Shown: positions 12,301 to 55,200 of the stretch, one piece after another | Numbering within the stretch: position 1 is the stretch's first letter | How the letters are laid out: each line of letters begins with the position of its first letter | NCBI GenBank assembly: GCA_002269645.1 | Contig: NIVC01001632.1 | Span: forward strand, 1 to 64,000 | Origin: Macrostomum lignano | Lineage: Eukaryota | DNA length: 64,000 nt | Reading direction: 5' to 3' | Position numbers and translations under genes: made by a program | Notes under the pieces: generated by a model | Seen by the model: only the letters and a program-made list of their open reading frames with translations | Database searches by the model: none | Told to the model about the DNA's origin: nothing

Positions 12301-15300
12301 CTTAAAAATCGAGAAAAAACGCTGAACCGATATGTATCGAAAACATTTAAAATCAAGAAAAAATTTTTGGCCGATATGTATCGAAAGCATTTAAAGTTAA
12401 GGAAAAAAATTGAGCCGATATGTATCGAAGTAATAAATAATAAAGTAGAGTTCATGACCGATATGTGTCAAAGTCACTTAAATCAATTATTTCAAAGCCG
12501 ATATGTATCGAAAACACTTAAAATCAAGTAAAAATAGCAAAGTTGATGATGTTTAAAATCTATTAAATTAACTCTAATTTGTGTCCACAATGTCGTCTAT
12601 GTAGGATCGTCCCCGCCTAATTGAGACTCTCAAGCCCTACCGCATTGTCGACGTGGCCTGTGGCAGCTCGCATTCGGCCGCTGTCGGCTTCAACGGCGAA
12701 TTGTTCACCTGGGGCCTGGGCGAATACGGCCGACTTGGTCACGGCGATAGCGATACTCAAATGCGGCCGAAGCGGGTCGAAGCGCTTAAATCGATGCGTG
12801 TTGTTCAGGTGCGCTTGTGAAAGACAGATTGGGTTGTAGTCTGCTCTTACCTTGTCTAATCTCACATTCTGTCTTAGTCTAACATTTTCTAGTCTCACTT
12901 TTTCTAAGCCTAACATTTATCTAACCTTTACCTAGTCTCACACCTTGTCTATTCTCACTGCCTTGTCTATTCTCACCGCCTTGTCTATTCTCATCGCCTT
13001 GTCTATTCTCACCGCCTTGTCTATTCTCACCGCATTGTCTATTCTCACACCTTGTCTACTCTCACACCTTGCCTATTCTCACCGCCTTGTCTATTCTCAT
13101 CGCCTTGTCTATTCTCACCGCCTTGTCTATTCTCACCACATTGTCTACTCTCACCGCATTGTCTACTCTTATACCTTGTCTAGTCTCACACCTTGTCTAT
13201 TCTCACCACCTTGTCTATTCTCACCACCTTGTCTACTCTCACACCTTGTCTACTCTCACACCTTGCCTAGTCTCACCAACTTGTTTAGTCTCACCAACTT
13301 GTCTAGTCTCACACATTGTCTAGTCCCACCGCCTTGTCTTCTCTCACACCTTGTCTAGTCTCACCGCCTTGTCTAGTCCCACCGCCTTGTCTACTCTCAC
13401 ACCTTTCCTAGTCTAAATAAATCTTTAGCCTACTTTTGTAAGTTATGTAAGTAGTATGCTAAGCAAGTTCCTGAATGCGCGAACTTTTCAATTTACCGAA
13501 TTTTCTTATAACCCCCCCCCCACTCGCAGGTGTCCTGCGGCAGCCGGGACGCCCAGACCGTCGCCTTAACCGAAGACGGCAACGTCTGGTCGTGGGGCGA
13601 CGGTGACTTTGGCAAACTTGGCCGCGGCGGCTCCGAAGGCTGCAATTTGCCGGCTCGAATCGACGTGTTGTGCGGTCGTGGCGTTGAACAACTCGAATGC
13701 GGGGCTCAGTTCACTTTGGCGCTGACTAACCGTGGCGAAGTGTGGACCTGGGGCAAGGGCGACTATTACCGGCTGGGCCACGGCACTGACGAGCACGTGC
13801 GCAAGCCTACCATGGTTGAGGCGCTGCGCGATAAGCGAGTTGTTCACGTGGCCGTTGGGGCTCTGCACTGTCTGGCCGTCACGGATCAGGTAAGGAGCGA
13901 TAAGGCTATTTAATGTACATGTAGCCTAGTGCTTAGAGCGTCGGACTCGCGACTTGAAGGTCGGGGGTTCGCTTCTCGATCCCCACTGGAACAATTTGGG
14001 TCCTTGAGCAAGACACTTAACTCTGCATCATTACTTGAGTTCACCCAGTTGTAAAATGGGTGCCAGCATTAGCTGGGGTAATTGAGGACGTGTGTGTGTG
14101 TGGCGACCCCCCAGTCCTTGGACTGAACAGCCGTACGCAGCCTTCAGATGCGCCGCGCAAACAGCTGCGGCTGAGCTGTCGGTTGGGGCCGGTGTAATCA
14201 ATTATATCATTATTATTATTCCGAATGTGCAATGCCAGCTTAATCTTCATAAATTACCGTCCCAGGGCCAGGTCTACGCCTGGGGCGACAACGACCACGG
14301 CCAGCAGGGCAACGGCTCCACCACGGTGAACCGCCGGCCCTGCCTTGTCCAAGGCCTGGAAGGCTACCGGGTCACCCGGGTCGCCTGCGGCAGCTCGCAC
14401 AGCGTCGCTTGGACTCTGGCCGACTTTGGCCAGGCCGCCGCCGCTGCCGCCGCTGCAGCCGCCGCTGCCGCACCGGCGCACGAGCCGGTCCCGTTCGCGG
14501 CGGAGCGCAACCCTCTCGGCAGGACCTTCGCCATGGACGCCTGGGAGCGCGACGCCTGGGATCACTCAGTAGCTCCCCAGCCGCTGTCGGCCGCAGCCGC
14601 CGCCGACAAGCCGGTCGCAGCTTCGTCGTCCTCGACAGCAACGACGACGACAACACCGTCTCGACCGTCGCTTAGCCGCGTGACCCTCAGCGCCAAGCGG
14701 CTGGCCGACAAGCGGGCGGCGCTGACCTGCCTGCTGCGGGCTCGCCTGCTCCGTCTGGCCCGCTCAGCCGCCGTCGACTGCCTCAGCGCCGAGGTCGCTC
14801 TGGCTGCTGAACCTGCGCCGCTGAAGCAACCGACGACTCCTCCGATATCACCCTCGCCGCCACCACCGCCGCTGCCGGCGCCTCCGCGCTCGGAGACTCT
14901 GGAGAATCTGGACGGCGGCGCCCTGACCAGCATCGACGACATTCGACTGGACTTGCCCAGCGGCTCGCCAACTCACGCCCAAGTCGAATCCTCGCTAGAG
15001 GCCACCCCGGTGGAGGAGAGCCCGCCGCCTGCAGTTGAGCCCGAAGATGAAGCCGAGCAACACCGCCTGCTCACTAGCGGCGGCATCGCCCAGCTGCTCA
15101 GCCTACTCAAGCTGGCCATCTGCGATCGGGTGGCAACCTCGCCAGCTCCGGCCGTTAACGCGGCCTCGTCGCGCCGTCTGGCCGAGAAGCTCGAACGCCT
15201 GGCCGACGCCAATCAACGCGTCGCCAGTCTGCTGATTGACGCCTGCATCGCCGAGCTGGAGGCGGCCGCCGTCGACTCCGAGCTCACCGGCCAGGGCCGT

Positions 15301-32295: not shown

Positions 32296-32879
32296 TAAGC
32301 AAGTAGATGCAAGTGTCTTTTAAAAGCAGAAATGCTTCTGGCAATTGAATTTTCTGCTCCTAATTCTACGAGAAGGGCGGCTGTAATGTCTGTTTGAACC
32401 GATGGGTCTATTCTTGGCACTGGCACAAGAGCCTGGCTGACCGCTAAGGACTCGAAGGACTCAAAGAACGATTAGTCGCTGGGATAAAAAAATGCTCGCT
32501 GGGGTAGGAGGAGGCAGCAATGCTCCCATTGGGATTTCTTCTGGCAGCGCTGAGAGGAGCAGATTGGGCCCCGGAGGTCATCGAGGACCTGCAACTGCAG
32601 GCCATGGTTCAGCATCATTTTCTGCTGAATATCCAGCTGATTAGGGCGGCCGGTTGCGCGGGGTTGCAAATCCTCGTCTTTATTGGCCAGGGACTGCCAT
32701 TGGCTGTAGAGCGGCAGTTTCGGGTGCAGCGGAGGCTCTCAACTCTTATTATCCGAGATCTGCATTCTGGCGGCTGCCATTGCGGCTCCACATCTCTCCG
32801 TCTGTCCGTCTGATACCGCGCTTCGGACTGAGGCTACGGCACAGCTGAAAAAAACTGCTGGTGAGTCGGTTTTGGTCGA

Positions 32880-36530: not shown

Positions 36531-37084
36531 GCTCAAGGAAAAGCAAGTTGAAAATTAACAAAATATTTTTGTGATAGACGTGAATTGAGCTTGAAAATTA
36601 GTGGAAAACAAAAGTTGAGGGCAACGGGAAGATTTCTATGAGCTATCATTATTTAAAGGGCTACGGCTAAGGCTAGGGCTGTGGCGCAGTTGACAGCTCT
36701 GGGCAGAACAATGCACCATGAAAAGAAACTGCAATGATGAGACAAAGAAAGTGCTGCAGCATTTAGCGAGGAATTGCTGAATAATTCATGAGCTGCCTCA
36801 TCAAATTGAGTAGAAGCGTGTCAGACAATGAGAGCGGGCTTACGAGACTCGGGTGCAACTCAAGCACTACTGGAGCGACAGTTTGAATAGAACTAATTGG
36901 GAAGGGGGAATTGGGAAGTTAAATACACTTATGGGGAGGAAAATTTTAGGACCCTAATTGGCGAGGAAAAAAAACTAGGACGCAACTACTCGCTCGCTTT
37001 TGTTCCCATCTTGCAGACACGCGCCGCGCCACTGCATAGCTGAGCAGCCCATTGTGGAGAACCTGCTTGCCGCTTTGAGGAGAC

Positions 37085-40043
37085 ATGAAGCACTGCACCA
37101 AGCTGCCCATCTGGTGGGCTGTGCTCGCCCTCTGTCTGGTGGCACCTGCCAGCCTCAAGGTGAGAATGGCGAGAGCGAGAGGGAGGGCGAGAGCGAGAAG
37201 GAGGGCGAGAGCGAGAGGGAGGGCGGGAGCGAGAGGGAGGGCGGGAGTGAGAGGGAGGGCGAGAGCGAGAGAGAGGGCGAGAGTGAGAGGGAGGGCGAGA
37301 GTGAGAGGGAGGGCGAGAGTGAGAGGGAGGGTGAGAGCGAGAGGGAGGGCGGGAGTGAGAGGGAGGGCGAGAGCGAGACGGAGGGCGGGAGTGAGAGGGA
37401 GGGCGGGAGTGAGAGGGAGGGCGAGAGGGAGGGTGAGAGTGAGAGGGAGGGCGGGAGTGAGAGGGAGGGCGAGAGGGAGGGTGAGAGTGAGAGGGAGGGC
37501 GGGAGTGAGAGGGAGGGCGAGAGTGAGAGGGAGGGCGGGAGTGAGAGGGAGGGCGAGAGCGAGAGGGAGGGCAGGAGTGACAGGGAGGGCAGGAGTGACA
37601 GGGGTGAGATGGCATAGGGGAGAGAGAAGGGGTGAGATGGCACAGGGGAGAGGGAAGGGGTGAGATGGCACAGGGGAGAGTGAAGGGTGAGATGGCACAG
37701 GGGAGAGGGAAGGGGTGAGATGGCACAGGGGAGAGAGGAGGGGTGAGATGGCACAGGGGAGAGGGAAGGGGTGAGATGGCACAGGGGAGAGAGGAGGGGT
37801 GAGATGGCACAGGGGAGAGTGAAGGGTGAGATGGCACAGGGGAGAGTTATTAAGGGTGAGATGGCACAGGGGAGAGGGAAGGGTGAGATGGCACAGGGGA
37901 GAGAGAAGGGGTGAGATGACACAGGGGAGAGGGAAGGGTGAGATGGCCCGATTGACTGCCATAGACGGCGATCGCTTCCGCAGGTTTGCAGTAGGAGGAG
38001 GATTAGTATAACTCTAATCCACCTGTAGAGAAGAAGAAAACGGGGTGTCATTACTCGTAATTGGGGCTTTAAACTCAGCAGTTGTTTGCCCTGGAAACAC
38101 ACGGCAGACAGGAGATTAACAATGCAGCTTGTATCAAGGACTTCTTTACATAACACTTGGACTAGAAGCCAGACTTCTCTCGACTTTAACCCCAAAAAAC
38201 AATCCAATTTATGGACAAGTTTTACTCTAGTCCAGGTCTTTATCGACGTCCTTGGCGCGGGTTTATCTAGGCTGATCGACTTTTTGCCTGCCAGACGACG
38301 CTATTCTGAACAAACAAAATCGTTTCTGCAGAGAATTCGGAAGAAACTCCCGTATCTAGCAAAAGCCGGGCAATCAGAGCAACACAATATGAGCAAAAAT
38401 AGAATGCTTTTAACCGGCAATTGTGGATAATAGACATTGTGACCGTTCTGTACAGCTCAGTTCACAGAGCTCGGAAAGACATGGAGAGTATCGATGTTGA
38501 ACTTGAAGTTCAGCACATTTACAGGGGTCAAAGAGAGGTCGGTGGATAGTTTTGAAACGGAGTTGGAGAACGGGACAGCTGGAGAGGGGAGGCCAGAGAG
38601 GGGAGGTCAGATAGGAATCCGCTAGAGAAGGGAGGTCAGAGAGGAGAGGTCAGAAAGGGGAGGTCAGAGAGGAGAGGCCAGAGAGGGGAGGTCAGACAGG
38701 AATCCGCTAGAGAGGGGAGGCCAGAGAGGGGAGGTCAGACAGGAATCCGCTAGAGAGGGGAGGTCAGACAGGAATCCGCTAGAGAGGGGAGGTCAGAGAG
38801 GAATCCGCTAGAGAGGGGAGGTCAGAGAGGAATCCGCTAGAGAGGGGAGGTCAGACAGGAATCCGCTAGAGAGGGGAGGTCAGAGAGGAATCCGCTAGAG
38901 AGGGGAGGTCAGACAGGAATCCGCTAGAGAGGGGAGGTCAGAGAGGGGAGGTCAGAGAGGGAGTCAGAGGGGGCCGGTGGGGCGAAGGTGTCAAAAAGCA
39001 AATTAATCAAATCAGTGGCATGAAAGTCATTAAGCAGATCCCAGCGGTGTGCAAAGTGTTGATGGCCAGCTTCTAAACAGTTGAACTTAGCTAACAGAAC
39101 TGAATATCAGCAGTGCTAACCAGTTAAAATTCAGTCTGATCAATCAGCTTACCCAGCTAAATGAACTAAAAGCATGAAGAAGGCAGACTAAAAAATAAGA
39201 AAATTAAGACTCTAAAAATTTTTCGCACGGTGTGTCATCGGGAGCTGCTTCCATCAAGTCAGCCGCTCAGTCAGTGCAGTTAGTAAAATCCAGAATCCCG
39301 AATAAGAGTTATTGCTTCTGCCGTTCCGAAACAAAATTGATTAACTCCAAGAGTGTTATAGAAAGCGAAAATCGCGCACTCAGCACTATCCTGATCTGTC
39401 TTGAGCCGGTGGCTTGGCTAAGAACATAATCTTAATTCCAGTTCGGCAGTCCTTCTATAGCAACTTTACTTTACTAACTCAATTTTTCGTGGCGCTACAG
39501 AGAGAAATTTGATTCGCCTCTCTCATTCCGCAGCAAATCGAGGATGCCGACTCTCAAGCTGAAGTCGAGCGCCGCTTCGACCCGCTGATCATGAGAAAGA
39601 GGTTCGACCCGCTGATCATGAGAAAGAGGTTCGACCCGCTGATCATGAGAAAGAGGTTTGACCCGCTGATCATGAAGCGCTTCGACCCGCTGATCATGAA
39701 GCGCTTTGACCCGCTGATCATGAAGCGCTTCGACCCGCTGATCATAAAGCGCTTCGACCCGCTGATCATGAGAAAGAAGTTCGACCCGCTGATCATGAGA
39801 AAGAAGTTCGACCCGCTGATCATGAGAAAGAGGTTTGACCCGCTGATCATGAAGCGCTTCGACCCGCTGATCATGAAGCGCTTCGACCCGCTGATCATGA
39901 AGCGCTTCGACCCGCTGATCATGAAGCGCTTCGACCCGCTGATCATGAAGCGCTTCGACCCGCTGATCATGAGAAAGAAGTTCGACCCGCTGATCATGAA
40001 GAAGCTAGGAGGTTCGGGCAGATCAGAAGAAGACAAAGAATGA
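37085..40043 (+). CDS. Putative neuropeptide/peptide-hormone precursor (signal peptide + 17 x FDPLI[M/I]), 2 coding exons, about 194 aa
   Basis: Exon 37017-37159 (polypyrimidine + CAG acceptor at 37016, ATG 37085, donor AAG|GTGAGA, phase 0) encodes MKHCTKLPIWWAVLALCLVAPASLK. Exon 39534-40043 (TCTCATTCCGCAG acceptor, phase 0) encodes QIEDADSQAEVERR, then 16 FDPLIM and 1 FDPLII separated by KR/RKR/RKK, then KKLGGSGRSEEDKE*. The splice between them is inferred. Confidence 0.8.
37165..37945. repeat. Two purine-rich arrays (GAGAGGGAGGGC-type, then GGGTGAGATGGCACAGGGGAGAG-type) in the peptide-gene intron
   Basis: Tandem copies beginning directly after the 37160 donor. Confidence 0.9.
38585..38965. 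repeat. 29-bp minisatellite (GAGAGGGGAGGTCAGACAGGAATCCGCTA)
   Basis: Tandem copies visible. Confidence 0.88.
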
Positions 40044-40248
40044 GCAAGGACAGCTAATTGACTCAGCAGCAGAGAAGGCCAATCAGTAGACGCCACAGCA
40101 GCGAGTTCAGTCTACAGCGACAACGCTATCAAATTCAAAGGCAACGGTTATATTTAATTTATCCCTAAAAAACTTTTCCCCAAAGCTACGAAAGCTCCAT
40201 AAAAATGTCAAGTCACAGAGCAAGATCTGTACCGGCCAGGCAAGCTGA

Positions 40249-40254
40249 AATAAA
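40249..40254 (+). promoter_or_regulatory. Candidate poly(A) signal of the peptide-precursor gene
   Basis: AATAAA about 205 nt after the TGA at 40041-40043; a second AATAAA lies near 40410. Confidence 0.35.
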
Positions 40255-40965
40255 ACTCTTCGGACTCCTGCAATTCAAAGCCGTGCTTTAAAACTTTGTC
40301 AGTTATTTCAGAACTTGTCAGAAGATTGATGGGAGCATAATCCTCAGAGGGAACTAATAGGAAAAAAGGGAGTGAGGGAATGGAGAGATTCACTAGACTT
40401 CTTCTCGAACAATAAAGCAAGGGTTCACTGTGTCATTACAGGACCTAGGAATCCAGGCATTGTGAAGCTTAACAACTGCTGCAGGCTCATGCAAATTACG
40501 GTTCTGTAAGTTGGGCAAAAGCCGCAAGCATCAGATACAAAATCCGCAATGCTAGGCGAATTCAATAGGAACAGTTTTTAAGAAAGCAGATTCTCCGCGT
40601 TGATAACAATTAGATCGCTGGGCACTGGATTTTTCTCCGGTGAGAAAAACTTTAAATTTTCGTACGAGGGCTGTGCTCATTCCGCTGACTCTGAGCACAT
40701 TCAAGAGCGCCAATTCTGTACTCAGGCACGAGCTCATGCACACGCTCACACAGGGTGTACAGCAGCCCAGACTTTCTAATCGTCTGGCATGTACTCTCTC
40801 TGTGCCTTGAAAGCTGGCCATCAGGTGCGTCGCCACCAGGGGGGGGGGACATGTCCCCCCTCAGTAAAAGCTATGGGGGACATGCCAATGCTTTGTCCCC
40901 CCCCACCCCACCTTGTGACCCGTTGTGGTAATCAATAACATTTCTTCAGGACGCCAAGAACGCCA

Positions 40966-41903
40966 AGGTTGTCAAGAAAGTTCCTGGCAATTCTAGAATG
41001 TTCCATCAACTCGAGTTTTTTAAATGCTGAATCGCATCAAATATCAAAATAGTCCCCATCTGAGTCAATGACCTTCTGCCATTTTTCTGGCAGACTTTTT
41101 ATAACATCACTGTAGAAACCATCACTGTATGAGCCATTGATTGACTTCATCGTCATCAACGAAGCTCTGACCGCGCAGGCTGTTGCTCATGGCCGAAAAC
41201 AGGTGGTAATCGGATGGTGCAAGGTCGGGAGAATATGGTGGGTTTGGGAGAATCTCCCACCCCAGTTGCAGCAATATCTGGCGGGTCACCTTAGCCGTAT
41301 GCGGTCGGGCGTTGTCGTGAAGGAAAAGAACTTTGCTGTGCCCTGGGCGCAGTTCGTCGATTTTCTCAGCCACCTTCTGCAGTTGTTGGCAGTAGACCTC
41401 GGCTGTGACAGTGGTGTTGCGAGGAAGCACAGGATACCTTTGCTGTCCCACCATACAGACAGCATGACCTTTCGCGGGTGCAACTCCGGTTTCGGATGAT
41501 GCTGCGGTGGTTGATTCTCAGAGACCCAAGATTGTCGGCGCTTCTCGTTGACGCAGAGCACCCATTTCTCATCTCAAGTCTTAATCGACTCCAGCCAAGC
41601 TGTGGTACGCCGGAACGAGAGCAATGAAGTTGCCGCCTCCGCCCGCCGCTGACGGTCAAAGTTGCTGAGGTGGTGGGGCACCCACTTGTCGAGTTTTGAA
41701 ACCTTGTCAATGGCACGCAGTTTGTTGAATTCGGTTGTACGAGCTATGAGACGCCCCAAGGGTGGCCGCTATTTCACGTATTGTCAGATGCGGGTCAGCT
41801 TCCACTATGGCGCCGATTTCTTCGTCATCAACTTCGGAAGGCCTACCCGATCGTGGCTGATCTTCGATGGATTCGTCGCTAGCGCGGAATCGTCGAAACC
41901 AGA
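40966..41903 (-). mobile_element. Decayed, 5'-truncated mariner transposase fragment (D,D34D)
   Basis: Minus-strand pieces WFRRF...EDQPRSGRP, KWVPHHL, T*DEKW (nonsense where G is expected), KVMLSVWWDSKG, FLHDNARPH...YSPDLAPSDY (34 residues between the Ds), LPEKWQKVIDSDGDYFDI* (stop 41037-39). Mariner-like TIR remnant AGGTTGTCAAGAAAG at 40966. Several frameshifts and stops. Confidence 0.92.
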
Positions 41904-41904
41904 G

Positions 41905-42745
41905 TGCCTGCAGCGCCAAAATGAGTGCCTGTGGCACCAAAATGAGTGCCTGCGGCGCCAAAATGAGCGCCTGTGGCACCAAAATGAGTGCCTGCGGCGC
42001 CAAAATGAGTGCCTGTGGCACCAAAATGAGTGCCTGCGGCGCCAAAATGAGCGCCTGTGGCACCAAAATGAGTGCCTGCGGCGCCAAAATGAGTGCCTGT
42101 GGCACCAAAATGAGTGCCTGCGGCGCCAAAATGAGTGCCTGTGGCACCAAAATGAGTGCCTGCGGCGCCAAAATGAGCGCCTGTGGCACCAAAATGAGTG
42201 CCTGCGGCGCCAAAATGAGTGCCTGTGGCACCAAAATGAGTGCGTGGCACCAAAATGAGTGCCTGCGGCGCCAAAATGAGTGCCTGTGGCACCAAAATGA
42301 GTGCCTGCGGCGCCAAAATGAGCGCCTGTGGCACCAAAATGAGTGCCTGTGGCACCAAAATGAGTGCCTGTGGCACCAAAATGAGTGCCTGCGGCGCCAA
42401 AATGAGCGCCTGTGGCACCAAAATGAGTGCCTGTGGCACCAAAATGAGTGCCTGCGGCGCCAAAATGAGCGCCTGTGGCACCAAAATGAGTGCCTGTGGC
42501 ACCAAAATGAGTGCCTGTGGCACCAAAATGAGTGCCTGCGGTGCCAAAATGAGTGCCTGCGGTGCCAAAATGAGTGCCTGCGGTGCCAAAATGAGTGCCT
42601 GCGGCGCTAAAATGAGTGCCTGCGGCGCCAAAATGAGTGCCTGCGGCGCCAAAATGAGTGCCTGCGGCGCCAAAATGAGTGCCTGCGGCGCCAAAATGAG
42701 TGCCTGCGGCGCTAAAATGAGTGCCCGCAGCGCCAAAATGAGCGC
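41905..42745. repeat. 21-bp minisatellite (CAAAATGAGTGCCTGCGGCGC / CAAAATGAGTGCCTGTGGCAC)
   Basis: About 40 copies with two alternating variants, inside the inverted-repeat element. Confidence 0.95.
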
Positions 42746-43614
42746 TGACAACATGATTCTCAAAATAATGGAAATGTAGGAATTTAGTCATGTACATGTT
42801 GAATTCTTGGCTTTGTCCCCCCACCATAAAATCCATGGCGACGCCCATGGCTGTGAGTCGCACAACAACCCCCCTCCAGACCAATTCTCGTGCTCACAAG
42901 CCCCAAATGAATCGATAGATAAACAACCGAAAAGTACAGCATATTGTTAGAATTTTCATAAATACGGTCTTAAATAAACAGATGGAGCATGTTGCCGAAA
43001 AACGCGCACAGGTAAGCTACAATTATAACAGATTTATTCAGAGTATTTCAATATAATTCAGAACAGAATCTCGAACACAGCGAAAGAGAGCGGGCAGGGG
43101 CGCGGACACAGTAACAATAATTAATATATTAATAACAATATTGCAGGGTTACAGGGTTACAACTATCAATACTAGGATTATATTAAAAAAGCTACACCGA
43201 TCAATATCTCATAGCAAAGGACTTTTAAAAAAGAAACTATTTATTGACAGATCGCGCCAAAGCAGACATGAATGAAATTTGTCGCTTGTAACAACTTCAA
43301 TCTCTCAGCAAATTAATAGGCAGGCACTGCAGTGTTAGCCCATCACAGTGAGAGATCTCTGCTCGAAATGCCAATTAGATTTGATTCGCCGCGATATGAA
43401 TGATGCGATTTGAGTGCAGAACTTCTGTAGAGATCTGTTGGGGCTCTTTGGCTAGATATGACTGCTACCTTGGACAGGGGAAGATGAGACCGGCTTAGAT
43501 GGGGGAATAGATTAGAGAGTGATGGATCAGAGGGGAGAGTGATAGAAGACGGGGAGAGTGATAGATAGAGAGGGAGCGTGATAGATACTGGTAGGAGAGT
43601 AATAAATGAAAAAG

Positions 43615-44045
43615 GATGAGTGATAGATGAGAGAGGGAGAGTGACAGATGAGAAAGGGAGAGTGACAGATGAGAGAGGGAGAGTGACAGATGAGAGAGGG
43701 AGAGTGACAGATGAGAGAGGGAGAGTGACAGATGAGAGAGGGAGAGTGACAGATGAGAGAGGGAGAGTGACAGATGAGAGAGGGAGAGTGACAGATGAGA
43801 GAGGGAGTGACAGATGAGAGAGGGAGAGTGACAGATGAGAGAGGGAGAGTGACAGATGAGAGAGGGAGAGTGACAGATGAGAGAGGGAGAGTGACAGATG
43901 AGAGAGGGAGAGTGACAGATGAGAGAGGGAGAGTGACAGATGAGAGAGGGAGAGTGACAGATGAGAGAGGGAGAGTGACAGATGAGAGAGGGAGAGTGAC
44001 AGATGAGAGAGGGAGAGTGACAGATGAGAGAGGGAGAGTGTTAGA
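43615..44045. repeat. 21-bp purine-rich minisatellite (GAGAGAGGGAGAGTGACAGAT)
   Basis: Near-perfect copies. Confidence 0.94.
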
Positions 44046-44589
44046 TGAGATCGAGACAGATCAGAGAGCCGGACCACATGGCAAAAAACAGTACACACAG
44101 CAATAGTACATGACATTAAAAGAAGCCAGAGTCTTCACGGGGTTAAGTGTAACAGATAAATATAAACGCAGCAAAATGTGTTGTTATTATTATAAAAAAT
44201 GGAAAAGGCGTAACACAGTGCAAAAGAAGAAATACACAACTAAAATAGAACGTGCTTGAAAGAAAACGCAAAAGCACAAAAATAGGTCAACTTTATTACT
44301 GCTAATACATGGGTAGCAAAACCAGCAATACAACACTGTACGGTTTTATCTTGTTTGGTCGGACAAAGTACAGATATCAATAGAATGATGGAGTATCAGA
44401 CAAAATAAATAATAGTGAATAAAACGAAAATCACACGGGTTCAAGACAGACAAATAATAAGTCAGCATAAATATGATAATATCAAATTACTAAAGTCGTC
44501 TGAATATTTTATGCACAGGCTGGATACAGATCTTGCCAAATATGAGTGAGTTATCGCATTGGACATTCATGATGTGTCAAAAGCTCAAA

Positions 44590-45430
44590 TTTGCTACTCA
44601 AATCTACTTACTACTCAGATTTAATTACTTAATACTCAAATCGATCTCCTACTCAATTTACTGCTCAAATCTACTTACACAAATCCACTGCTCAAATCTA
44701 CTTACACAAATCCACTGCTCAAATCTACTTACTCAAATCTACTCACTACTCAAATCTACTTACTCAAATCCACTTACTCAAATCCACTTACTCAAATCTA
44801 CTTACTCAAATCTACTTACTACTAAAATCTACTTACTCAGATCTACCCACTACTCAAATCCACTGCTCAAATCTACTCACTACTCAAATCTACTGACTCA
44901 AATCTACTCACTACTCAAATCCAATGCTCAAATCTACTCAATACTCAAATTCACTGCTCAAATCTACTCACTACTCAAATTCACTGCTCAAATCTACTCA
45001 CTACTCAAATCCAATGCTCAAATCTACTCGCTACTCAAATCTACTTACTCAAATCTACTCACTACTCAAATTCAATGCTCAAATCTACTCGCTACTCAAA
45101 TCTACTCACTACTCAAATTCAATGCTCAAATCTACTCGCTACTCAAATCTACTCACTACTCAAATCCAATGCTCAAATCTACTCGCTACTCAAATCTACT
45201 TACTCAAATCTACTCACTACTCAAATCCAATGCTCAAATCTACTGGCTACTCAATCTACTCGCTACTCAAATACAATGCTCAAATCTACTCACTACTCAA
45301 ATCTACTCACTACTCAAATCTACTCACTACTCAAATCCAATGCTCAAATCTACTCACTACTCAAATCCAATGCTCAAATCTACTCACTACTCAAATCCAA
45401 TGCTCAAATCTACTCACTACTCAAATCCGA
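44590..45430. repeat. ACTCAAATCTACTC-type degenerate minisatellite downstream of the CNOT1 stop
   Basis: Recurring CTCAAAT motif. Confidence 0.9.
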
Positions 45431-45671
45431 ACGCCAAGCTCCCAGGGGGACATCTCAGACAAAACTAATTGAATGGTGCAAAAAACAATACGGATTTTAA
45501 AAATAACTCAGACAAATAGACAAACGGGGGCGAATGGGGGAGGTGGAGAGGACGCGATCAAAAAAAAATTCAGTCGATTCAAGTCAATTCCAGCCACCCA
45601 AAATAGCAATTATTATTATTAGTAATATTAATAGTTATCATTAGCGCATACGAGAGCTGCGGCGATAGTCA

Positions 45672-46163
45672 TCAGAGACCATTGTCAACTGGATCCTGCT
45701 GCTGCTGCTGCTGCAGCGAGTGAGGCAGCGGCGGAGGCGGCGGCATGCGAAATCCGGGCACGCAGGATCTGGCCACGGACTCGAGCACCCTGCCGAGTGG
45801 ATGAGGGAAGAGAGACTTAATTAAATTAATCCCGGCCAGATAATGGTTATTGAATTTAGAAAACAATGGACGCACTTTTCAATTTGAGGCGAGAAGCGCA
45901 CGAACTCGTGATCCCAGAATCGATAGGTGGGATTCTTCAGCAGCTCGGTGAAGGTGAGCAGCAGGCCCCACGGATGCGGCCGGAGCACTATGAGGCGCTC
46001 GAGTAGGACTCTGCGGATTAGGGCGGGGTGCGTATTGCATCTGTGCGTATTGCCGATACTGTTTGAGACATGCTGGTCTGTCTGCCTTGGTCTGTATTAG
46101 TGTCTGTCTGTCTGTCTTTCTGTCTGTCTGTCTGTCTTTCTGTCTGTCTGTCTGCCTGCGTGC

Positions 46164-52200: not shown

Positions 52201-55200
52201 GACTCCGGGACGCTTCTTGGCTTAGATGCCATTTTCATCGGGCAATAAACACTCGGTTTTAGCCTATTGAACTAGAATTGCACTAACTAGCCTACTGAGT
52301 TAGTGGAAAGTTAAGCGCCAGCACAACGATTCTTGGACGACTTTTTCGCGACTCTTTCACGCTTCTACAACTCACGTGACGCGCTTGTGATGCAACAGTC
52401 ACCTCTCCGTCGCATTTGACGCGTTTGAGTCGTTCCTCTTTTCTCCTCTCTAGTCTAGTCTCTTTTCTCCTCTCTAGTCTAGTCTCTTTTCTCCTCTCTA
52501 GTCTAGTCTCTTTTCTCCTCTCTAGTCTAGTTTCTTTTCTCCTCTCTAGTCTAGTCTCTTTTTTCCTCTCTAGTCTAGTCTCTTTTCTCCTCTCTAGTCT
52601 AGTCTCTTTTCTCCTCTCTAGTCTAGTCTCTTTTCTCCTCTCTAGTCTAGTCTCTTTTCTCCTCTCTAGTCTAGTCTCTTTTCTCCTCTCTAGTCTAGTC
52701 TCTTTTCTCCTCTCTAGTCTAGTCTCTTTTCTCCTCTCTAGTCTAGTCTCTTTTCTCCTCTCTAGTCTAGTCTCTTTTCTCCTCTCTAGTCTAGTCTCTT
52801 TTCTCCTCTCTAGTCTAGTCTCTTTTCTCCTCTCTAGTCTAGTCTCTTTTCTCCTCTCTAGTCTAGTCTCTTTTCTCCTCTCTAGTCTAGTCTCTTTTCT
52901 CCTCTCTAGTCTAGTCTCTTTTCTCCTCTCTAGTCTAGTCTCTTTTCTCCTCTCTAGTCTAGTCTCTTTTCTCCTCTCTAGTCTAGTCTCTTTTCTCCTC
53001 TCTAGTCTAGTCTCTCTTCTCCTCTCTAGTCTAGTCTCTTTTCTTCTCTCTAGTCTAGTCTCTTTTCTCCTCTCTAGTCTAGTCTCTTTTCTCCTCTCTA
53101 GTCTAGTCTCTTTTCTCCTCTCCTCTTCTTCTGTCTTTTCTCCTCTCCCTACTCGGTTCCCTCTCATCTCTCCCCTCTGGCCCGCAGTCACACGCTAGGC
53201 TCCCTATCTGGCCTTGAGGTAAAACACAAGTCGTCAAAGAGTCGTATCTGAGTCGCAGTTGAGCCTAAAGCACACATCTGCGTCACTTTATGAATCTGTA
53301 ACAACTTTGAATTGTTTGCAATAATTCTTTAAACTCTTGGGCACGGTCGTCAACGTTTTCAAGGGGCCATTTTGCATGTAACTTTTCAGAATCGGCAGTT
53401 TGGAAACATACCGGAAGTGGATGATGAGACGGCGCTGAAAACCTGCTGCTGATGATGATGACGATTAAAAGCAGCCGAGGAGGCTGAGGGCGCGTCTTGA
53501 AAGCTCAACGGCGGCATTGGAGGCTGGGAATGATGCGGAAAAGTTGCAGGCTCGAATTCCTCAGCCGGTGCGGTCATCTGCAGGCCAGCAGCTACCCGAA
53601 GCTCCGACTGCTCGGTAGGCCTCCCGCCGGCAGTCTGGCTGGAGCGGATCTGGCAGCTCTCCATCTCGATCTGCCTGACCCGTTCGCTGTCCCGCAGATA
53701 ATAAGCCGGCTCCAATTCGTCAAAATTGATGCTCAAATTTCTGCACAAAATTTCCACTTCAAATTTTAACGAATTCTTCACCGCCTTGTCCATGTGCAGC
53801 TCTTTCAATACGCGAATGATGCCCATTGTCCAGGGATTTGGAGGCCGGAACACGGTGCTAGCGTTGCAAGCCTCCAGGGTACGAGAGACAAAGGGTACAG
53901 CGTAGTGCATCTCTACCTGACCTTTGCAGTAGGCCTCCAATAGCAGGCCTTTCAAATTCATGTCTTCGTATAGTATAGGCCGGTTCTTAGCCAGCGTGAG
54001 CAGTCCGAGAAAGCGGCCAATATTTTTGAGCAGAGCCCTGTCATTATAATCGTTCAGATCCGGTCGCATATTGAGCAGCAGTGCTCTAATACTGCGAAAC
54101 GTTTGCTGCAGTACAACTTCTTTTAATTTAGGCACATTCAAAGCGTCCATCAAGTCAATGTAGAGCTGGTGAAAGTTTGGCTCTGTGGTAACCCGCTTCA
54201 TCACTAGGTACTGCCCCAGCCAGGGTATGTAATCCTCTGGCACAGCTCGGAGCAGCTCTTCCGCTTTTGTGCCAATATTAATCTTGCTCAAATTGTTAAA
54301 GATGAAGAATACAGCATCCTGTACAGACTCGGGAGGGCTAACTGGCTCCTCAACGACTGTCGAGTCTGGAGCTGAATCGCCAGATCTGCCTTGCTGATCA
54401 TCGGAGCGACCGGCTGTGACCAGCGACCCGGCACCGGCCTCCGTGTTGCTGGCACCGTTCGCAGCAATTTGAATTGCAATCTGCAGATCCTTGGGGAACT
54501 TGGCGAAATTGGAGCAGGACAGCAGGTGGCTGGCTACCTGGCGGTAATCCGATAGGCTGGGCTTGCACCTGTGCAGGGCGGGTTGGAGTTATGAATGCGG
54601 TGGATGTGGGATTATATGAATATCGGATTAAATGAGTCTGGGATAAGGGATTATATGAATGAGATATGAGATAACGAACACAAATTGGATTATGAGCACA
54701 CGGAGATGGGATCATGAGCACACGGAGATGGGATCATGAGCACACGGAGATGGGATCATGAGCACACGGAGATGGGATCATGAGCACACGGAGATGGGAT
54801 CATGAGCACACGGAGATAGGATCATGAGCACACGGAGATGGGATCATGAACACACGGAGATGGGATCATGAGCACACTGAGATGGGATCATGAGCACACG
54901 GAGATGGGATCATGAGCACACGGAGATAGGATCATGAGCACACGGAGATGGGATCACGAGCACACGGATGTGGGGATCATGAACACACTGAGATGGGATC
55001 ATGAACACACGGAGATGGGATCATGAGCACACGGATGTGGGGATCATGAACACACGGAGATGGGATCATGAGCACACGGATGTGGGGATCATGAACACAC
55101 TGAGATGGGATCATGAGCACACGGAGATGGGATCATGAGCACACGGAGATGGGATCATGAGCACACGGAGATGGAGGACCATAATAAACAACTCTGCTAC

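What the first reader, a model, noticed from the sequence alone, without database searches (positions are those of the whole stretch)
37017..40043. Hidden neuropeptide precursor gene encoding 17 copies of FDPLI(M/I), disguised as another satellite
Seen: the array at 39570-40000 reads as KR/RKR/RKK-FDPLIM, 17 units counting the first (RR-flanked). Unlike the neighbouring satellites, its units vary only by whole codons (24 vs 27 nt) and by synonymous or conservative changes (TTC/TTT, CGC/AGG, R/K, one M to I). It is framed by a splice acceptor, a unique acidic leader (QIEDADSQAEVERR) and a unique tail with a stop. A phase-0 exon 2.4 kb upstream encodes a classic signal peptide (basic N-terminus, LPIWWAVLALCLV core, A-P-A cleavage motif). 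Established: signal peptide plus repeated short peptides between dibasic prohormone-convertase sites is the standard neuropeptide precursor layout; no Gly precedes the basic sites, so the peptides would not be amidated. Inference: a flatworm-type neuropeptide. From memory it resembles planarian FDPI(M/Q)F-type secreted peptides, which I could not verify; this non-amidated, highly multicopy form may be uncharacterised. The KK sites may be cleaved less well and give longer products.
Basis: partly seen in the sequence, partly recalled or inferred. Interest (0 to 1): 0.88.

Follow-up and report, generated by a model that had tools for sequence, protein, structure and literature searches.

The report
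Flatworm FDPLIM neuropeptide precursor gene
What looks like one more 24-base satellite in this Macrostomum lignano (free-living flatworm) sequence is very probably a real two-exon gene for a secreted precursor carrying 17 copies of the small peptide FDPLIM; it is a badly annotated new member of the already known flatworm FDPI-type (spp-15 / npp-26) neuropeptide family, not a new kind of signal.

Summary
ATG 37085-37159 encodes a 25-codon signal peptide ending at a phase-0 AAG|GTGAGA donor. A 2374-nt satellite-filled intron follows. Exon 2 (39534-40043) encodes QIEDADSQAEVERR, then 16x FDPLIM and 1x FDPLII separated only by RR/KR/RKR/RKK/KK, then a unique tail and a stop (194 aa).

The window is Macrostomum lignano. 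The only public model of this locus (UniProt A0A1I8HH48) is a truncated fragment that reads exon 1 out of frame through a weaker donor.

The main support comes from a paralogue next to the other CNOT1 copy (PAA57848.1, Mlig023240). It has the same structure: a signal-peptide exon, a phase-0 intron, an acidic leader and 16 genomic FDPLMM units. Its unit core differs by one base, although the flanks no longer align. Spacers in both loci encode only K/R.

Planarian spp-15 (FDPIQF/FDPIMF-amide, MS-confirmed) and schistosome npp-26 (non-amidated xFDPILF, neuronal, candidate GPCR ligand) share the layout and the intron position.

Expression, processing and function of this gene are inferred, not shown. 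Verdict: a genuine gene and a new member of a known family. Interest is moderate to low (0.35), not 0.88.

The parts
37017..37084 (+). Probable 5' UTR part of the signal-peptide exon. It begins right after a strong acceptor-like site (ttttgttcccatcttgcAG, AG at 37015-37016), which could take a trans-spliced leader or an upstream non-coding exon.
   Evidence: Sequence. The paralogue L001 has a similar ...cctccttgcAG about 50 nt before its ATG. Use as an acceptor is inferred.
37085..37159 (+). Exon 1 coding part: MKHCTKLPIWWAVLALCLVAPASLK, a signal peptide (n-region +2, h-region IWWAVLALCLV, APA|SLK cleavage motif). It ends in phase 0.
   Evidence: It is the only one of 54 upstream phase-0 ATG..GT candidates to pass the signal-peptide and donor filters. 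It is colinear with the signal peptides of paralogues P0002 (MVHPTK...) and P0038.
37160..39533 (+). Intron, 2374 nt, GTGAGA...CAG. It contains three unrelated minisatellites (37168-37603, 37600-37947, 38582-38973).
   Evidence: The donor matches MAG|GTRAGT at 8 of 9 positions, against 6 of 9 for the rival donor at 37115 used by model P0001. The splice itself is inferred, with no transcript available.
39534..39575 (+). Acidic leader QIEDADSQAEVE followed by RR, the first cleavage site.
   Evidence: P0001 contains the identical residues.
39576..40004 (+). Peptide array: 16x FDPLIM and 1x FDPLII (unit at 39729), separated by RKR/KR/RKK, ending in KK. It has a 7-unit (177-nt) higher-order repeat.
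40005..40043 (+). Unique C-terminal tail LGGSGRSEEDKE and TGA stop.
40044..40254 (+). Probable 3' UTR up to the first AATAAA (40249-40254). A second AATAAA lies at 40411.
   Evidence: Consensus match only.
32758..32860 (+). Possible upstream non-coding exon. It matches residues 1-34 of public model P0001 at 100% and ends at a strong donor CTG|GTGAGT. Low confidence that it belongs to this gene.

Best explanation
This is a functional two-exon gene of Macrostomum lignano. It encodes a 194-aa prepropeptide of the flatworm FDP(I/L)-type family (planarian spp-15, schistosome npp-26).

Shown from sequence:
- an N-terminal signal peptide in exon 1;
- a phase-0 GT...AG intron directly after it;
- an acidic leader;
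- 17 hexapeptide units, each bounded by di- or tribasic sites;
- no Gly before the basic residues;
- a unique tail, a stop codon and a downstream AATAAA.

Inferred mechanism:
1. The signal peptide is removed (probably APA|SLK).
2. In the regulated secretory pathway a PC2-type prohormone convertase cuts after RR/KR/RKR/RKK, and less efficiently after KK. M. lignano has a neuronally expressed, essential PC2 homologue (PMC4490696).
3. A carboxypeptidase E-like enzyme trims the basic residues. This releases about 16 FDPLIM and 1 FDPLII with free C-termini (FDPLIM [M+H]+ 735.375), plus the leader and tail peptides.
4. The peptides are released from neurons and act on a rhodopsin-type GPCR, by analogy with SmNPP26 and SmGPCR9/SmGPCR20.

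The array grew by unequal crossing-over (7-unit higher-order repeat), while selection held the peptide and the basic spacers constant.
For: - Architecture verified base by base.
- Organism and locus: P0001 (A0A1I8HH48, M. lignano) maps at 100% identity to three pieces of the window.
- Paralogue PAA57848.1 / Mlig023240 (L001) lies about 5.8 kb from the other CNOT1 copy. Exon 1 is a 27-codon signal peptide with a GAG|GTGCGT donor in phase 0, followed by a 320-nt intron. Exon 2 encodes MPDSEDMEDDSRDEEKR, 16 genomic FDPLMM units and a tail. The annotated protein carries the exon 1/exon 2 junction.
- The core unit is TTCGACCCGCTGATCATG here and TTCGACCCGCTGATGATG there. That is 17 of 18 bases conserved in all 33 units, while exon 1, intron, leader and tail no longer align by blastn. 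Within-array homogenisation cannot explain that cross-locus conservation.
- All 5 variable core sites are wobble positions (P = 0.004 for the predicted frame). All six spacer classes encode only K/R on the + strand but mixed K/R/N/L/F on the antisense strand.
- Known family with the same layout: Smed-spp-15, Smed-spp-16, Sma/Sja-npp-26 (PMC2953531). Schistosome npp-26-type proteins were recovered by phmmer (P0066 at 1.4e-9, P0122 at 2.2e-6). The S. curassoni gene has a phase-0 intron exactly after its signal peptide.
- Function in relatives: Smnpp26 is neuronal, and NFDPILF activates SmGPCR9.
Against: - No transcript, EST or peptide evidence for this gene could be obtained. Look-ups of the exon-2 ORF, P0001 and P0002 found nothing, and the spliced product could not be looked up.
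- The only public model of the locus (P0001) uses a different donor (CTG|GTGGGC at 37114/37115). If that donor were real, it would put the signal peptide out of frame.
- The gene does not appear as its own protein in the NCBI Mlig_3_7 annotation, as far as the protein searches show.
- The wobble-position test is strand-ambiguous: the antisense frame MISGSKRF gives 4 synonymous changes plus 1 M>I as well. It also rests on few mutational events.
- phmmer E-values are inflated by repetitiveness. Most of the 270 hits are unrelated repeat proteins, so homology to spp-15/npp-26 rests on motif, layout and intron position rather than on statistics.
- KK sites (the last spacer here, most spacers in the paralogue) are poorer convertase substrates.
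- The signal peptide was scored with heuristics, not SignalP.
Confidence: 0.78

Rival explanations
1. A secreted multi-copy peptide precursor, processed as described, but not neuronal. The peptides would be made by a gland, the gut or the reproductive tract, for example as seminal-fluid, adhesive-gland, antimicrobial or pheromone peptides.
For: Nothing in the sequence specifies the cell type. In planarians many prohormone genes are also expressed outside the CNS (PMC2953531). Smnpp26 and Smnpp40 signals also occur in parenchyma and subtegument. Three diverged paralogues in one species could indicate fast-evolving secreted products.
Against: The closest characterised relatives are predominantly neuronal and have candidate GPCRs. 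The peptide core is strongly conserved between paralogues, which is unlike fast-evolving reproductive or defence peptides.
Confidence: 0.1
2. The public model P0001 is right: exon 37040-37114 is spliced at CTG|GTGGGC to 39534. The product is then a non-secreted protein, or a different reading in which the array is translated without a signal peptide, or the ATG at 37085 is not used.
For: P0001 (A0A1I8HH48) exists in UniProt with exactly this junction, and its three pieces match the window at 100%.
Against: - P0001 has no start Met, no signal peptide, is truncated inside the array, and looks like an ab initio partial model.
- Both paralogues place a Met-initiated signal peptide in frame with the array.
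- With that junction the ATG-37085 frame would stop after about 26 codons.
Confidence: 0.05
3. A silent or decaying duplicate. The real, expressed gene would be the paralogue Mlig023240 (FDPLMM), and the window copy an unexpressed ohnologue that has not yet picked up disabling mutations.
For: Only the paralogue has a complete gene model in the NCBI annotation. No transcript evidence could be found for the window copy.
Against: All 17 units, both splice sites, the start, the signal peptide and the stop are intact. The two loci have diverged beyond DNA alignment everywhere except the array, so the window copy has stayed intact over a long time. Its only non-synonymous core variant is a single M>I.
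Confidence: 0.05
4. Just another non-coding minisatellite whose open frame and K/R-rich spacer are accidents of an AG-rich unit, with a fortuitous signal-peptide-like ORF upstream.
For: The window holds about 35 satellite families, and almost all give long ORFs. Another array (52436-53147, minus strand) mimics dibasic-flanked repeats by chance. The antisense frame of this array is open too.
Against: The same unit is conserved at a second locus with the same signal-peptide exon, intron and leader layout. A third paralogue and schistosome and planarian relatives share F-D-P-(L/I) and KR. All length variants are multiples of 3, unlike every other array. The upstream exon is unique among candidates.
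Confidence: 0.02

Closest known systems
Schistosoma npp-26 (Sma-npp-26 = Smp_071050, SmNPP26; Sja-npp-26)
   Same: - Flatworm gene with an N-terminal signal peptide.
- Several KR-flanked short peptides with an F-D-P-I/L-x-hydrophobic core (NFDPILF, SYFDPIIY, EHFDPIIY).
- No Gly before the basic site, so the peptides are not amidated (PMC2953531).
- Phase-0 intron directly after the signal peptide in S. curassoni.
- Recovered by phmmer from the window's exon 2 (P0066, P0122).
   Different: - Schistosome peptides carry 1-2 extra N-terminal residues and end in F/Y, not M.
- Only about 5-7 non-identical copies, against 17 near-identical ones.
- A long unrelated N-terminal propeptide.
- Function (neuronal expression, SmGPCR20 and SmGPCR9 interaction, RNAi phenotypes) is known there and untested here.
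Schmidtea mediterranea spp-15 (and spp-16)
   Same: Signal peptide, leader, then 8x KR-FDPIQF and 1x FDPIMF. These hexapeptides start exactly at F-D-P like FDPLIM, in a multicopy tandem layout, and were confirmed by tandem MS (PMC2953531).
   Different: spp-15 units end in Gly and are amidated (FDPIQFamide). Position 4 is I, not L, and the C-terminal residue is F, not M. There are 9 copies rather than 17. spp-16 has a single longer non-amidated pQFDPIMYGKLRQFY.
Macrostomum lignano paralogues: PAA57848.1 (BOX15_Mlig023240g1, FDPLMM) and A0A1I8FZM5 (FDPLYGM)
   Same: Same species and same layout. The FDPLMM gene has the same exon-intron structure, sits next to the other CNOT1 copy, and its unit core differs by 1 nt in 18.
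   Different: - Different signal peptides, leaders and tails.
- FDPLMM uses mostly KK spacers, all units are 24 nt, and the gene is inverted relative to CNOT1.
- Its annotated protein has only 5 of the 16 genomic units.
- Both are annotated only as hypothetical or secreted proteins, and neither is described in the searchable literature.
Nematode KR-FDP(Y/F/L) repeat precursors (C. angaria CAI5456649.1, Trichostrongylus KAK5970707.1, Mesorhabditis CAJ0583665.1)
   Same: Signal peptide, many KR/KK-flanked short peptides starting with FDP, and a two-exon gene with the intron after the signal peptide.
   Different: Peptides are shorter and more variable (FDPY-, FDPF-, FDPMF-type). The intron is in phase 2, not phase 0. 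There is an extra C-terminal ...GFGRK peptide. Homology versus convergence is unresolved, and I could not match them to a named nlp family.

Membership tests
Flatworm FDP(I/L)-type neuropeptide precursors (spp-15 / npp-26) | N-terminal cleavable signal peptide | tested here: met
   n-region MKHCTK (+2), h-region IWWAVLALCLV (mean Kyte-Doolittle 2.60), APA|SLK (-3,-1) motif. Values are comparable to Smed-spp-15, Sma-npp-26 and P0038. Heuristic scoring only, as no SignalP was available.
Flatworm FDP(I/L)-type neuropeptide precursors (spp-15 / npp-26) | Tandem copies of a 6-8-residue peptide with the core F-D-P-(I/L)-x-hydrophobic | tested here: met
   16x FDPLIM and 1x FDPLII, compared with FDPIQF/FDPIMF (spp-15) and NFDPILF/SYFDPIIY (npp-26).
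Flatworm FDP(I/L)-type neuropeptide precursors (spp-15 / npp-26) | Every copy bounded by dibasic prohormone-convertase sites | tested here: met
   RR, KR, RKR, RKK and KK only. The spacer DNA varies but always encodes K/R.
Flatworm FDP(I/L)-type neuropeptide precursors (spp-15 / npp-26) | Statistically supported sequence homology to named members | tested here: inconclusive
   phmmer recovers schistosome npp-26-type proteins (P0066 at 1.4e-9, P0122 at 2.2e-6). Unrelated repeat proteins score as well or better, so these E-values are not trustworthy for a repetitive query. Smed-spp-15 itself was not among the sequences inspected.
Flatworm FDP(I/L)-type neuropeptide precursors (spp-15 / npp-26) | Gene structure: phase-0 intron directly after the signal peptide, all peptides in one downstream exon | tested here: met
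   Window 37159|39534 (predicted), L001 6081|6402 (in the annotated protein), S. curassoni ...SSIINA|GT then IPVHEL. This is a common layout for neuropeptide genes, so it supports membership without being diagnostic.
Flatworm FDP(I/L)-type neuropeptide precursors (spp-15 / npp-26) | Occurs in Platyhelminthes | tested here: met
   The window is Macrostomum lignano.
Flatworm FDP(I/L)-type neuropeptide precursors (spp-15 / npp-26) | C-terminal Gly giving amidated peptides (spp-15 subtype only) | tested here: not met
   No Gly precedes any basic site. The npp-26 subtype and spp-16 also lack it, so this separates subtypes and does not exclude family membership.
Flatworm FDP(I/L)-type neuropeptide precursors (spp-15 / npp-26) | Neuronal expression, mature peptides detectable by MS, activation of a GPCR | not testable with these tools
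   Known for spp-15 (MS) and SmNPP26 (WISH, Y2H, BRET). No expression or peptide data for Macrostomum were reachable.
Nematode KR-FDP(Y/F) repeat precursors | Shared ancestry with the flatworm genes (same intron phase, alignable non-repeat regions) | tested here: not met
   The C. angaria intron after the signal peptide is in phase 2, against phase 0 in flatworms. Similarity is confined to the K/R-FDP motif.

The most novel reading that the evidence does not exclude
FDP-type peptides may be an unrecognised, ancient protostome neuropeptide family. It would link flatworm spp-15/npp-26, the three-gene Macrostomum expansion (FDPLIM, FDPLMM, FDPLYGM) and the nematode KR-FDP(Y/F) repeat precursors. 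The Macrostomum paralogues kept after genome duplication would then signal through distinct receptors. In that case M. lignano, which is transgenic, transparent and RNAi-tractable, would be a convenient system to deorphanise a receptor family of anthelmintic interest.
Probability: 0.12. Interest if true: 0.55.

Novelty: new member of a known kind. Interest (0 to 1): 0.35.

Why it matters
- **Annotation:** this is a clean case of a real peptide-hormone gene being lost among satellites. One public model mis-frames and truncates it. The paralogue's model collapses 16 units to 5, probably because short-read transcript assemblies cannot span the array.
- **Biology:** it adds a basal free-living flatworm to the FDPI-type family. 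The schistosome member (SmNPP26) is under study as a ligand of SmGPCR9/SmGPCR20, receptors that affect gonad development, egg production and motility. Macrostomum is genetically tractable, so its three paralogues offer a way to study this signalling system outside a parasite.
- **Method:** in this genome, ORF plus dibasic sites is not enough. A cross-locus comparison is what separates a gene from a satellite.

It does not reveal a new kind of molecule or mechanism.

Tried and rejected
- Direct transcript or contig evidence failed.
- Literature string searches for FDPLIM, FDPLI, DPLIM, RFDPL, KRFDP, FDPLYGM, FDPLMM, Mlig023240 and the UniProt accessions gave nothing relevant. McVeigh 2009 (PMC2749192) is not held.
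- I tried to fetch M. lignano CNOT1 to build a species-specific splice-site profile. The search returned nothing, probably because poly-Ala words swamped the candidates. I ran no further search on it and used the generic MAG|GTRAGT consensus instead.
- Pfam hits of the precursor (CdrL_M, DUF1848) are repeat artefacts with no passing stretch. Rfam and tRNA scans of the window were empty.
- I first took the 'all five variable sites are wobble positions' result as proof of the + frame. I had to weaken it because the open antisense frame shares the same wobble positions. Spacer coding and context settle the strand.
- I considered a fungal Kex2-processed repeat or RiPP precursor (ustiloxin-type). 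I rejected it because the window is a metazoan genome (HERC2-like gene, CNOT1, mariner) with a 2.4-kb intron.
- Most of the 270 phmmer hits (P0006, P0007, P0009 and others) are unrelated repeat proteins and were discarded.
Full report
**1. Observation**

The region was read and translated.

- **Array:** exactly 17 units match TT[CT]GACCCGCTGATCAT[AG] from 39576 to 39998. The + frame starting at 39534 reads QIEDADSQAEVERR, then (FDPLIM + RKR/KR/RKK) repeated, then [20 protein letters not shown] and a stop at 40041-40043. One unit (39729) is FDPLII.
- **Other frames:** the other two + frames have stops in every unit. Two antisense frames are open.
- **Exon 2 needs an upstream exon:** an in-frame TGA lies at 39510 and no ATG precedes the array. 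The sequence ...ctctcattccgcAG|CAA at 39533/39534 is a good acceptor.
- **Exon 1:** ATG 37085 to 37159 encodes MKHCTKLPIWWAVLALCLVAPASLK and is followed by GTGAGA. Both boundaries are phase 0, which gives a 194-aa product.
- **Intron:** 2374 nt, holding three unrelated satellites.
- **3' end:** AATAAA occurs at 40249 and 40411.

**2. Is it more than chance?**

The window is extraordinarily rich in minisatellites, with about 35 families, and nearly all of them give ORFs of 100-350 aa. An ORF is therefore worthless as evidence here. I ran three controls.

- **Satellite comparison.** Among 35 arrays, 39573-40001 is the only one in which all non-modal unit lengths (7 of 7; 24 nt x9, 27 nt x7) differ by a multiple of three. 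Other arrays with periods divisible by three show 0/18, 11/29, 6/21 and so on. However, one other array (52436-53147, minus strand, RRKETRLE x30, inside a CNOT1 intron) also has an open frame with about one dibasic site per unit. That criterion alone gives false positives.
- **Upstream exon.** There are 54 ATG-initiated, phase-0, GT-terminated candidate first exons (15-60 codons) in the 11 kb upstream of the acceptor. Only 37085-37159 passes modest filters: donor at least 7 of 9 consensus positions, 11-residue hydrophobicity at least 2.2, and a positive n-region. Window-wide, 2 of 443 pass, and the other lies inside a real HERC2 exon. About 0.1 chance hits would be expected.
- **Cross-locus comparison.** See section 4.

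**3. Organism and existing annotation**

The best protein hit, P0001 (UniProt A0A1I8HH48, Macrostomum lignano), maps at 100% identity to three pieces of the window: 32758-32859, 37039-37113 and 39534-39776. The window is therefore this M. lignano locus.

Pfam confirms the surroundings:
- an RCC1 + HECT (HERC2-like) gene upstream on the + strand;
- a mariner DDE relic at 41125-41454 on the minus strand;
- CNOT1 downstream on the minus strand.

P0001 is a poor model. It has no Met, is truncated inside the array, and is named 'PSCyt2 domain-containing protein'. It reads exon 1 in another frame and leaves it at CTG|GTGGGC (37114/37115), which matches 6 of 9 consensus positions. Its first piece ends at a strong donor (CTG|GTGAGT, 32860/32861) and may be a genuine non-coding upstream exon. 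A strong acceptor-like site also ends at 37016. This part is uncertain.

**4. Paralogues**

An exhaustive phmmer search with exon 2 gave 270 hits. Most are unrelated repeat proteins, but a few are clearly genuine relatives.

*P0038 (PAA57848.1, BOX15_Mlig023240g1, M. lignano).* Its locus L001 lies about 5.8 kb from the 3' end of a CNOT1 gene. L001 15-84 aligns to window 45793-45724 on the minus strand. This is therefore a paralogous copy of the same neighbourhood, with the peptide gene inverted relative to CNOT1. Its structure:
- exon 1 is ATG plus 27 codons (MRHNSTCRIGLACLMAFLLCAGVTHCE), then GAG|GTGCGT in phase 0;
- a 320-nt intron ends ...tctccAG;
- exon 2 encodes MPDSEDMEDDSRDEEKR, 16 genomic FDPLMM units with KK/KR spacers, and RRFLRKLHRLHE plus a stop.

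The annotated protein contains the exon 1/exon 2 junction but only 5 units. The model evidently skips 11 units, most likely because an assembled transcript collapsed the repeat.

The core unit differs by one base (ATC vs ATG, I vs M) in all 17 versus all 16 units. Meanwhile exon 1, the intron, the leader, the tail and the UTRs no longer align by blastn. Homogenisation within an array cannot keep two loci alike, so the core peptide and the basic spacers appear to be under purifying selection.

*Codon-position test.* The five variable core sites in the 33 units are all codon position 3. Three are synonymous (TTC/TTT, GAC/GAT, CCG/CCA), one is the fixed I/M difference and one is a single M>I. P = (1/3)^5 = 0.004 for the predicted frame.

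There is a caveat. The open antisense frame (MISGSKRF) shares these wobble positions and shows the same pattern, so this test does not pick the strand. The strand is settled by three things:
- the spacers, six DNA classes that all encode K/R on the + strand but KRR/KRF/NLFL/NFFL/NFF/NLF on the antisense strand;
- the splice sites and the signal peptide;
- the homologues.

*P0002 (A0A1I8FZM5, M. lignano).* This third paralogue has MVHPTKSLLIVAACLAVAYG, a leader and KR-FDPLYGM repeats.

**5. Known family**

Collins et al. 2010 (PMC2953531; Table 3 and supplementary tables) describe:
- Smed-spp-15: signal peptide, leader, 8x KR-FDPIQF-G and FDPIMF-G, with FDPIQFamide and FDPIMFamide confirmed by MS/MS;
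- Smed-spp-16: pQFDPIMYGKLRQFY, not amidated;
- Sma/Sja-npp-26 (Smp_071050): signal peptide plus KR-flanked TLFNPILF, NFDPILF, SYFDPIIY, SYFDPILF and EHFDPIIY, without Gly.

Smnpp26 is expressed mainly in neurons. It interacts with SmGPCR20 in a membrane yeast two-hybrid assay (PMC10783048). The non-amidated peptide NFDPILF gives a Gαq BRET signal through SmGPCR9, and RNAi produces gonad, egg and motility phenotypes (PMC13367911).

My phmmer search recovered schistosome npp-26-type proteins: S. turkestanicum P0066 and S. curassoni P0122. It also recovered an intronless AT-rich environmental contig encoding a signal peptide plus about 10x KR-YFDPIMY (P0024). The S. curassoni gene has a phase-0 intron exactly after its signal peptide (...SSIINA|GT, then about 8.8 kb, then IPVHEL...), as in both Macrostomum genes.

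Nematode proteins with KR-FDP(Y/F/L) repeats also scored (C. angaria, Trichostrongylus, Mesorhabditis). They have a two-exon layout too, but the intron is in phase 2. Their relationship is open.

**6. Mechanism**

*Shown:* the layout, namely signal peptide, acidic leader, 17 hexapeptides bounded by basic residues, no Gly, and a tail.

*Inferred from established prohormone processing and from the relatives:*
1. Signal peptidase cleaves, probably at APA|SLK.
2. A PC2-type convertase cleaves after the basic sites. M. lignano has a neuronally expressed PC2 homologue whose knock-down is lethal in juveniles (PMC4490696).
3. A carboxypeptidase trims the basic residues.
4. About 16 FDPLIM and 1 FDPLII with free carboxyl ends are released (for masses).
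5. The peptides act on a rhodopsin-type GPCR.

KK sites are probably cut less efficiently. In the paralogue, though, KK is the main spacer, so the family presumably uses it. The 177-nt (7-unit) higher-order repeat (spacer order) shows that the array grew by block duplication.

**7. Novelty and score**

Neither FDPLIM/FDPLMM nor the accession numbers appear in the searchable literature. The gene has no correct public model.

The kind of gene, the peptide motif, the non-amidated variant and a multicopy layout are all already known in flatworms. It is therefore a new member of a known family.

- It is useful for annotation, and for bringing a tractable free-living model to an npp-26 signalling system of parasitological interest.
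- It is not surprising to a specialist.
- Interest: 0.35.
- Confidence that it is a genuine FDP-type secreted peptide precursor gene: about 0.78 for the neuropeptide reading, and about 0.9 if the non-neuronal variant is included.
- Expression and processing remain to be shown.

Noticed in passing
window 52436-53147 (minus strand), inside a CNOT1 intron: A 24-nt satellite (about 30 units, 97% identical) whose minus-strand frame is open for 299 aa (ORF 52292-53191) and reads ETRLE-RRK repeated. It mimics a dibasic-flanked peptide array. It has no signal peptide or splice context that I looked for, so it is probably chance. It shows that ORF plus dibasic sites is not diagnostic in this genome.
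   Followed up: partly
whole window: About 35 different minisatellite families (periods 12-54 nt, arrays of 0.2-2.7 kb) occur roughly every 1-2 kb. Most lie in introns of the HERC2-like and CNOT1 genes, and each family is unique to its site. This is a striking genome property of M. lignano that breaks assemblies and gene models.
   Followed up: no
L001 6402-6872 (Mlig_3_7 NIVC01002440.1) vs protein PAA57848.1: The genome encodes 16 FDPLMM units, but the annotated protein has 5. The public CDS skips 11 units, probably because a collapsed short-read transcript was used to build the model.
   Followed up: yes
window 32758-32860 and 37039-37114; UniProt A0A1I8HH48: The public model of this locus is a mis-framed, truncated fragment with a spurious name ('PSCyt2 domain-containing protein'). 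Its first piece ends at a strong GTGAGT donor and could be a real non-coding 5' exon of the peptide gene, or part of something else.
   Followed up: partly
window 40043-45800 vs L001 220-6001: In both paralogous neighbourhoods the peptide gene lies about 5.7-5.8 kb from the 3' end of CNOT1, but in opposite orientation (convergent here, tandem in L001). This implies an inversion after the duplication.
   Followed up: partly
window 41122-41716 (minus strand): Relic of a mariner/Tc1-type transposase (Pfam Transposase_1 and DDE_3 on 41125-41454), broken into overlapping frames, between the peptide gene and CNOT1. Its upstream part runs into the 21-nt satellite at 41902-42742.
   Followed up: partly
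L002 (C. angaria CANHGI010000006.1), P0005/P0153 (Trichostrongylus), P0143 (Mesorhabditis): Nematodes have signal-peptide precursors with many KR/KK-flanked FDPY/FDPF/FDPL peptides and a C-terminal ...GFGRK peptide. They are two-exon genes with a phase-2 intron after the signal peptide. I could not assign them to a named nlp family. Either convergence or deep homology with the flatworm FDP family is possible.
   Followed up: partly
L003 (JGI sample 3300030603, 904-nt contig, GC 30%): An intronless environmental contig encodes a signal peptide plus about 10x KR-YFDPIMY (non-amidated). It is probably a transcript of an AT-rich free-living flatworm, and it looks like another unannotated member of the family.
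   Followed up: partly
window 40840-40915: Runs of G(10) and C(6-8) flank the repeated motif GGGGGACATG(T/C)CC... They form an imperfect palindrome-like element downstream of the peptide gene, possibly a transposon end.
   Followed up: no
window 12787 (minus strand): A single KRFDPL match in a minus-strand ORF (12617-12916). It is isolated, with no repeats, and is most likely chance.
   Followed up: no
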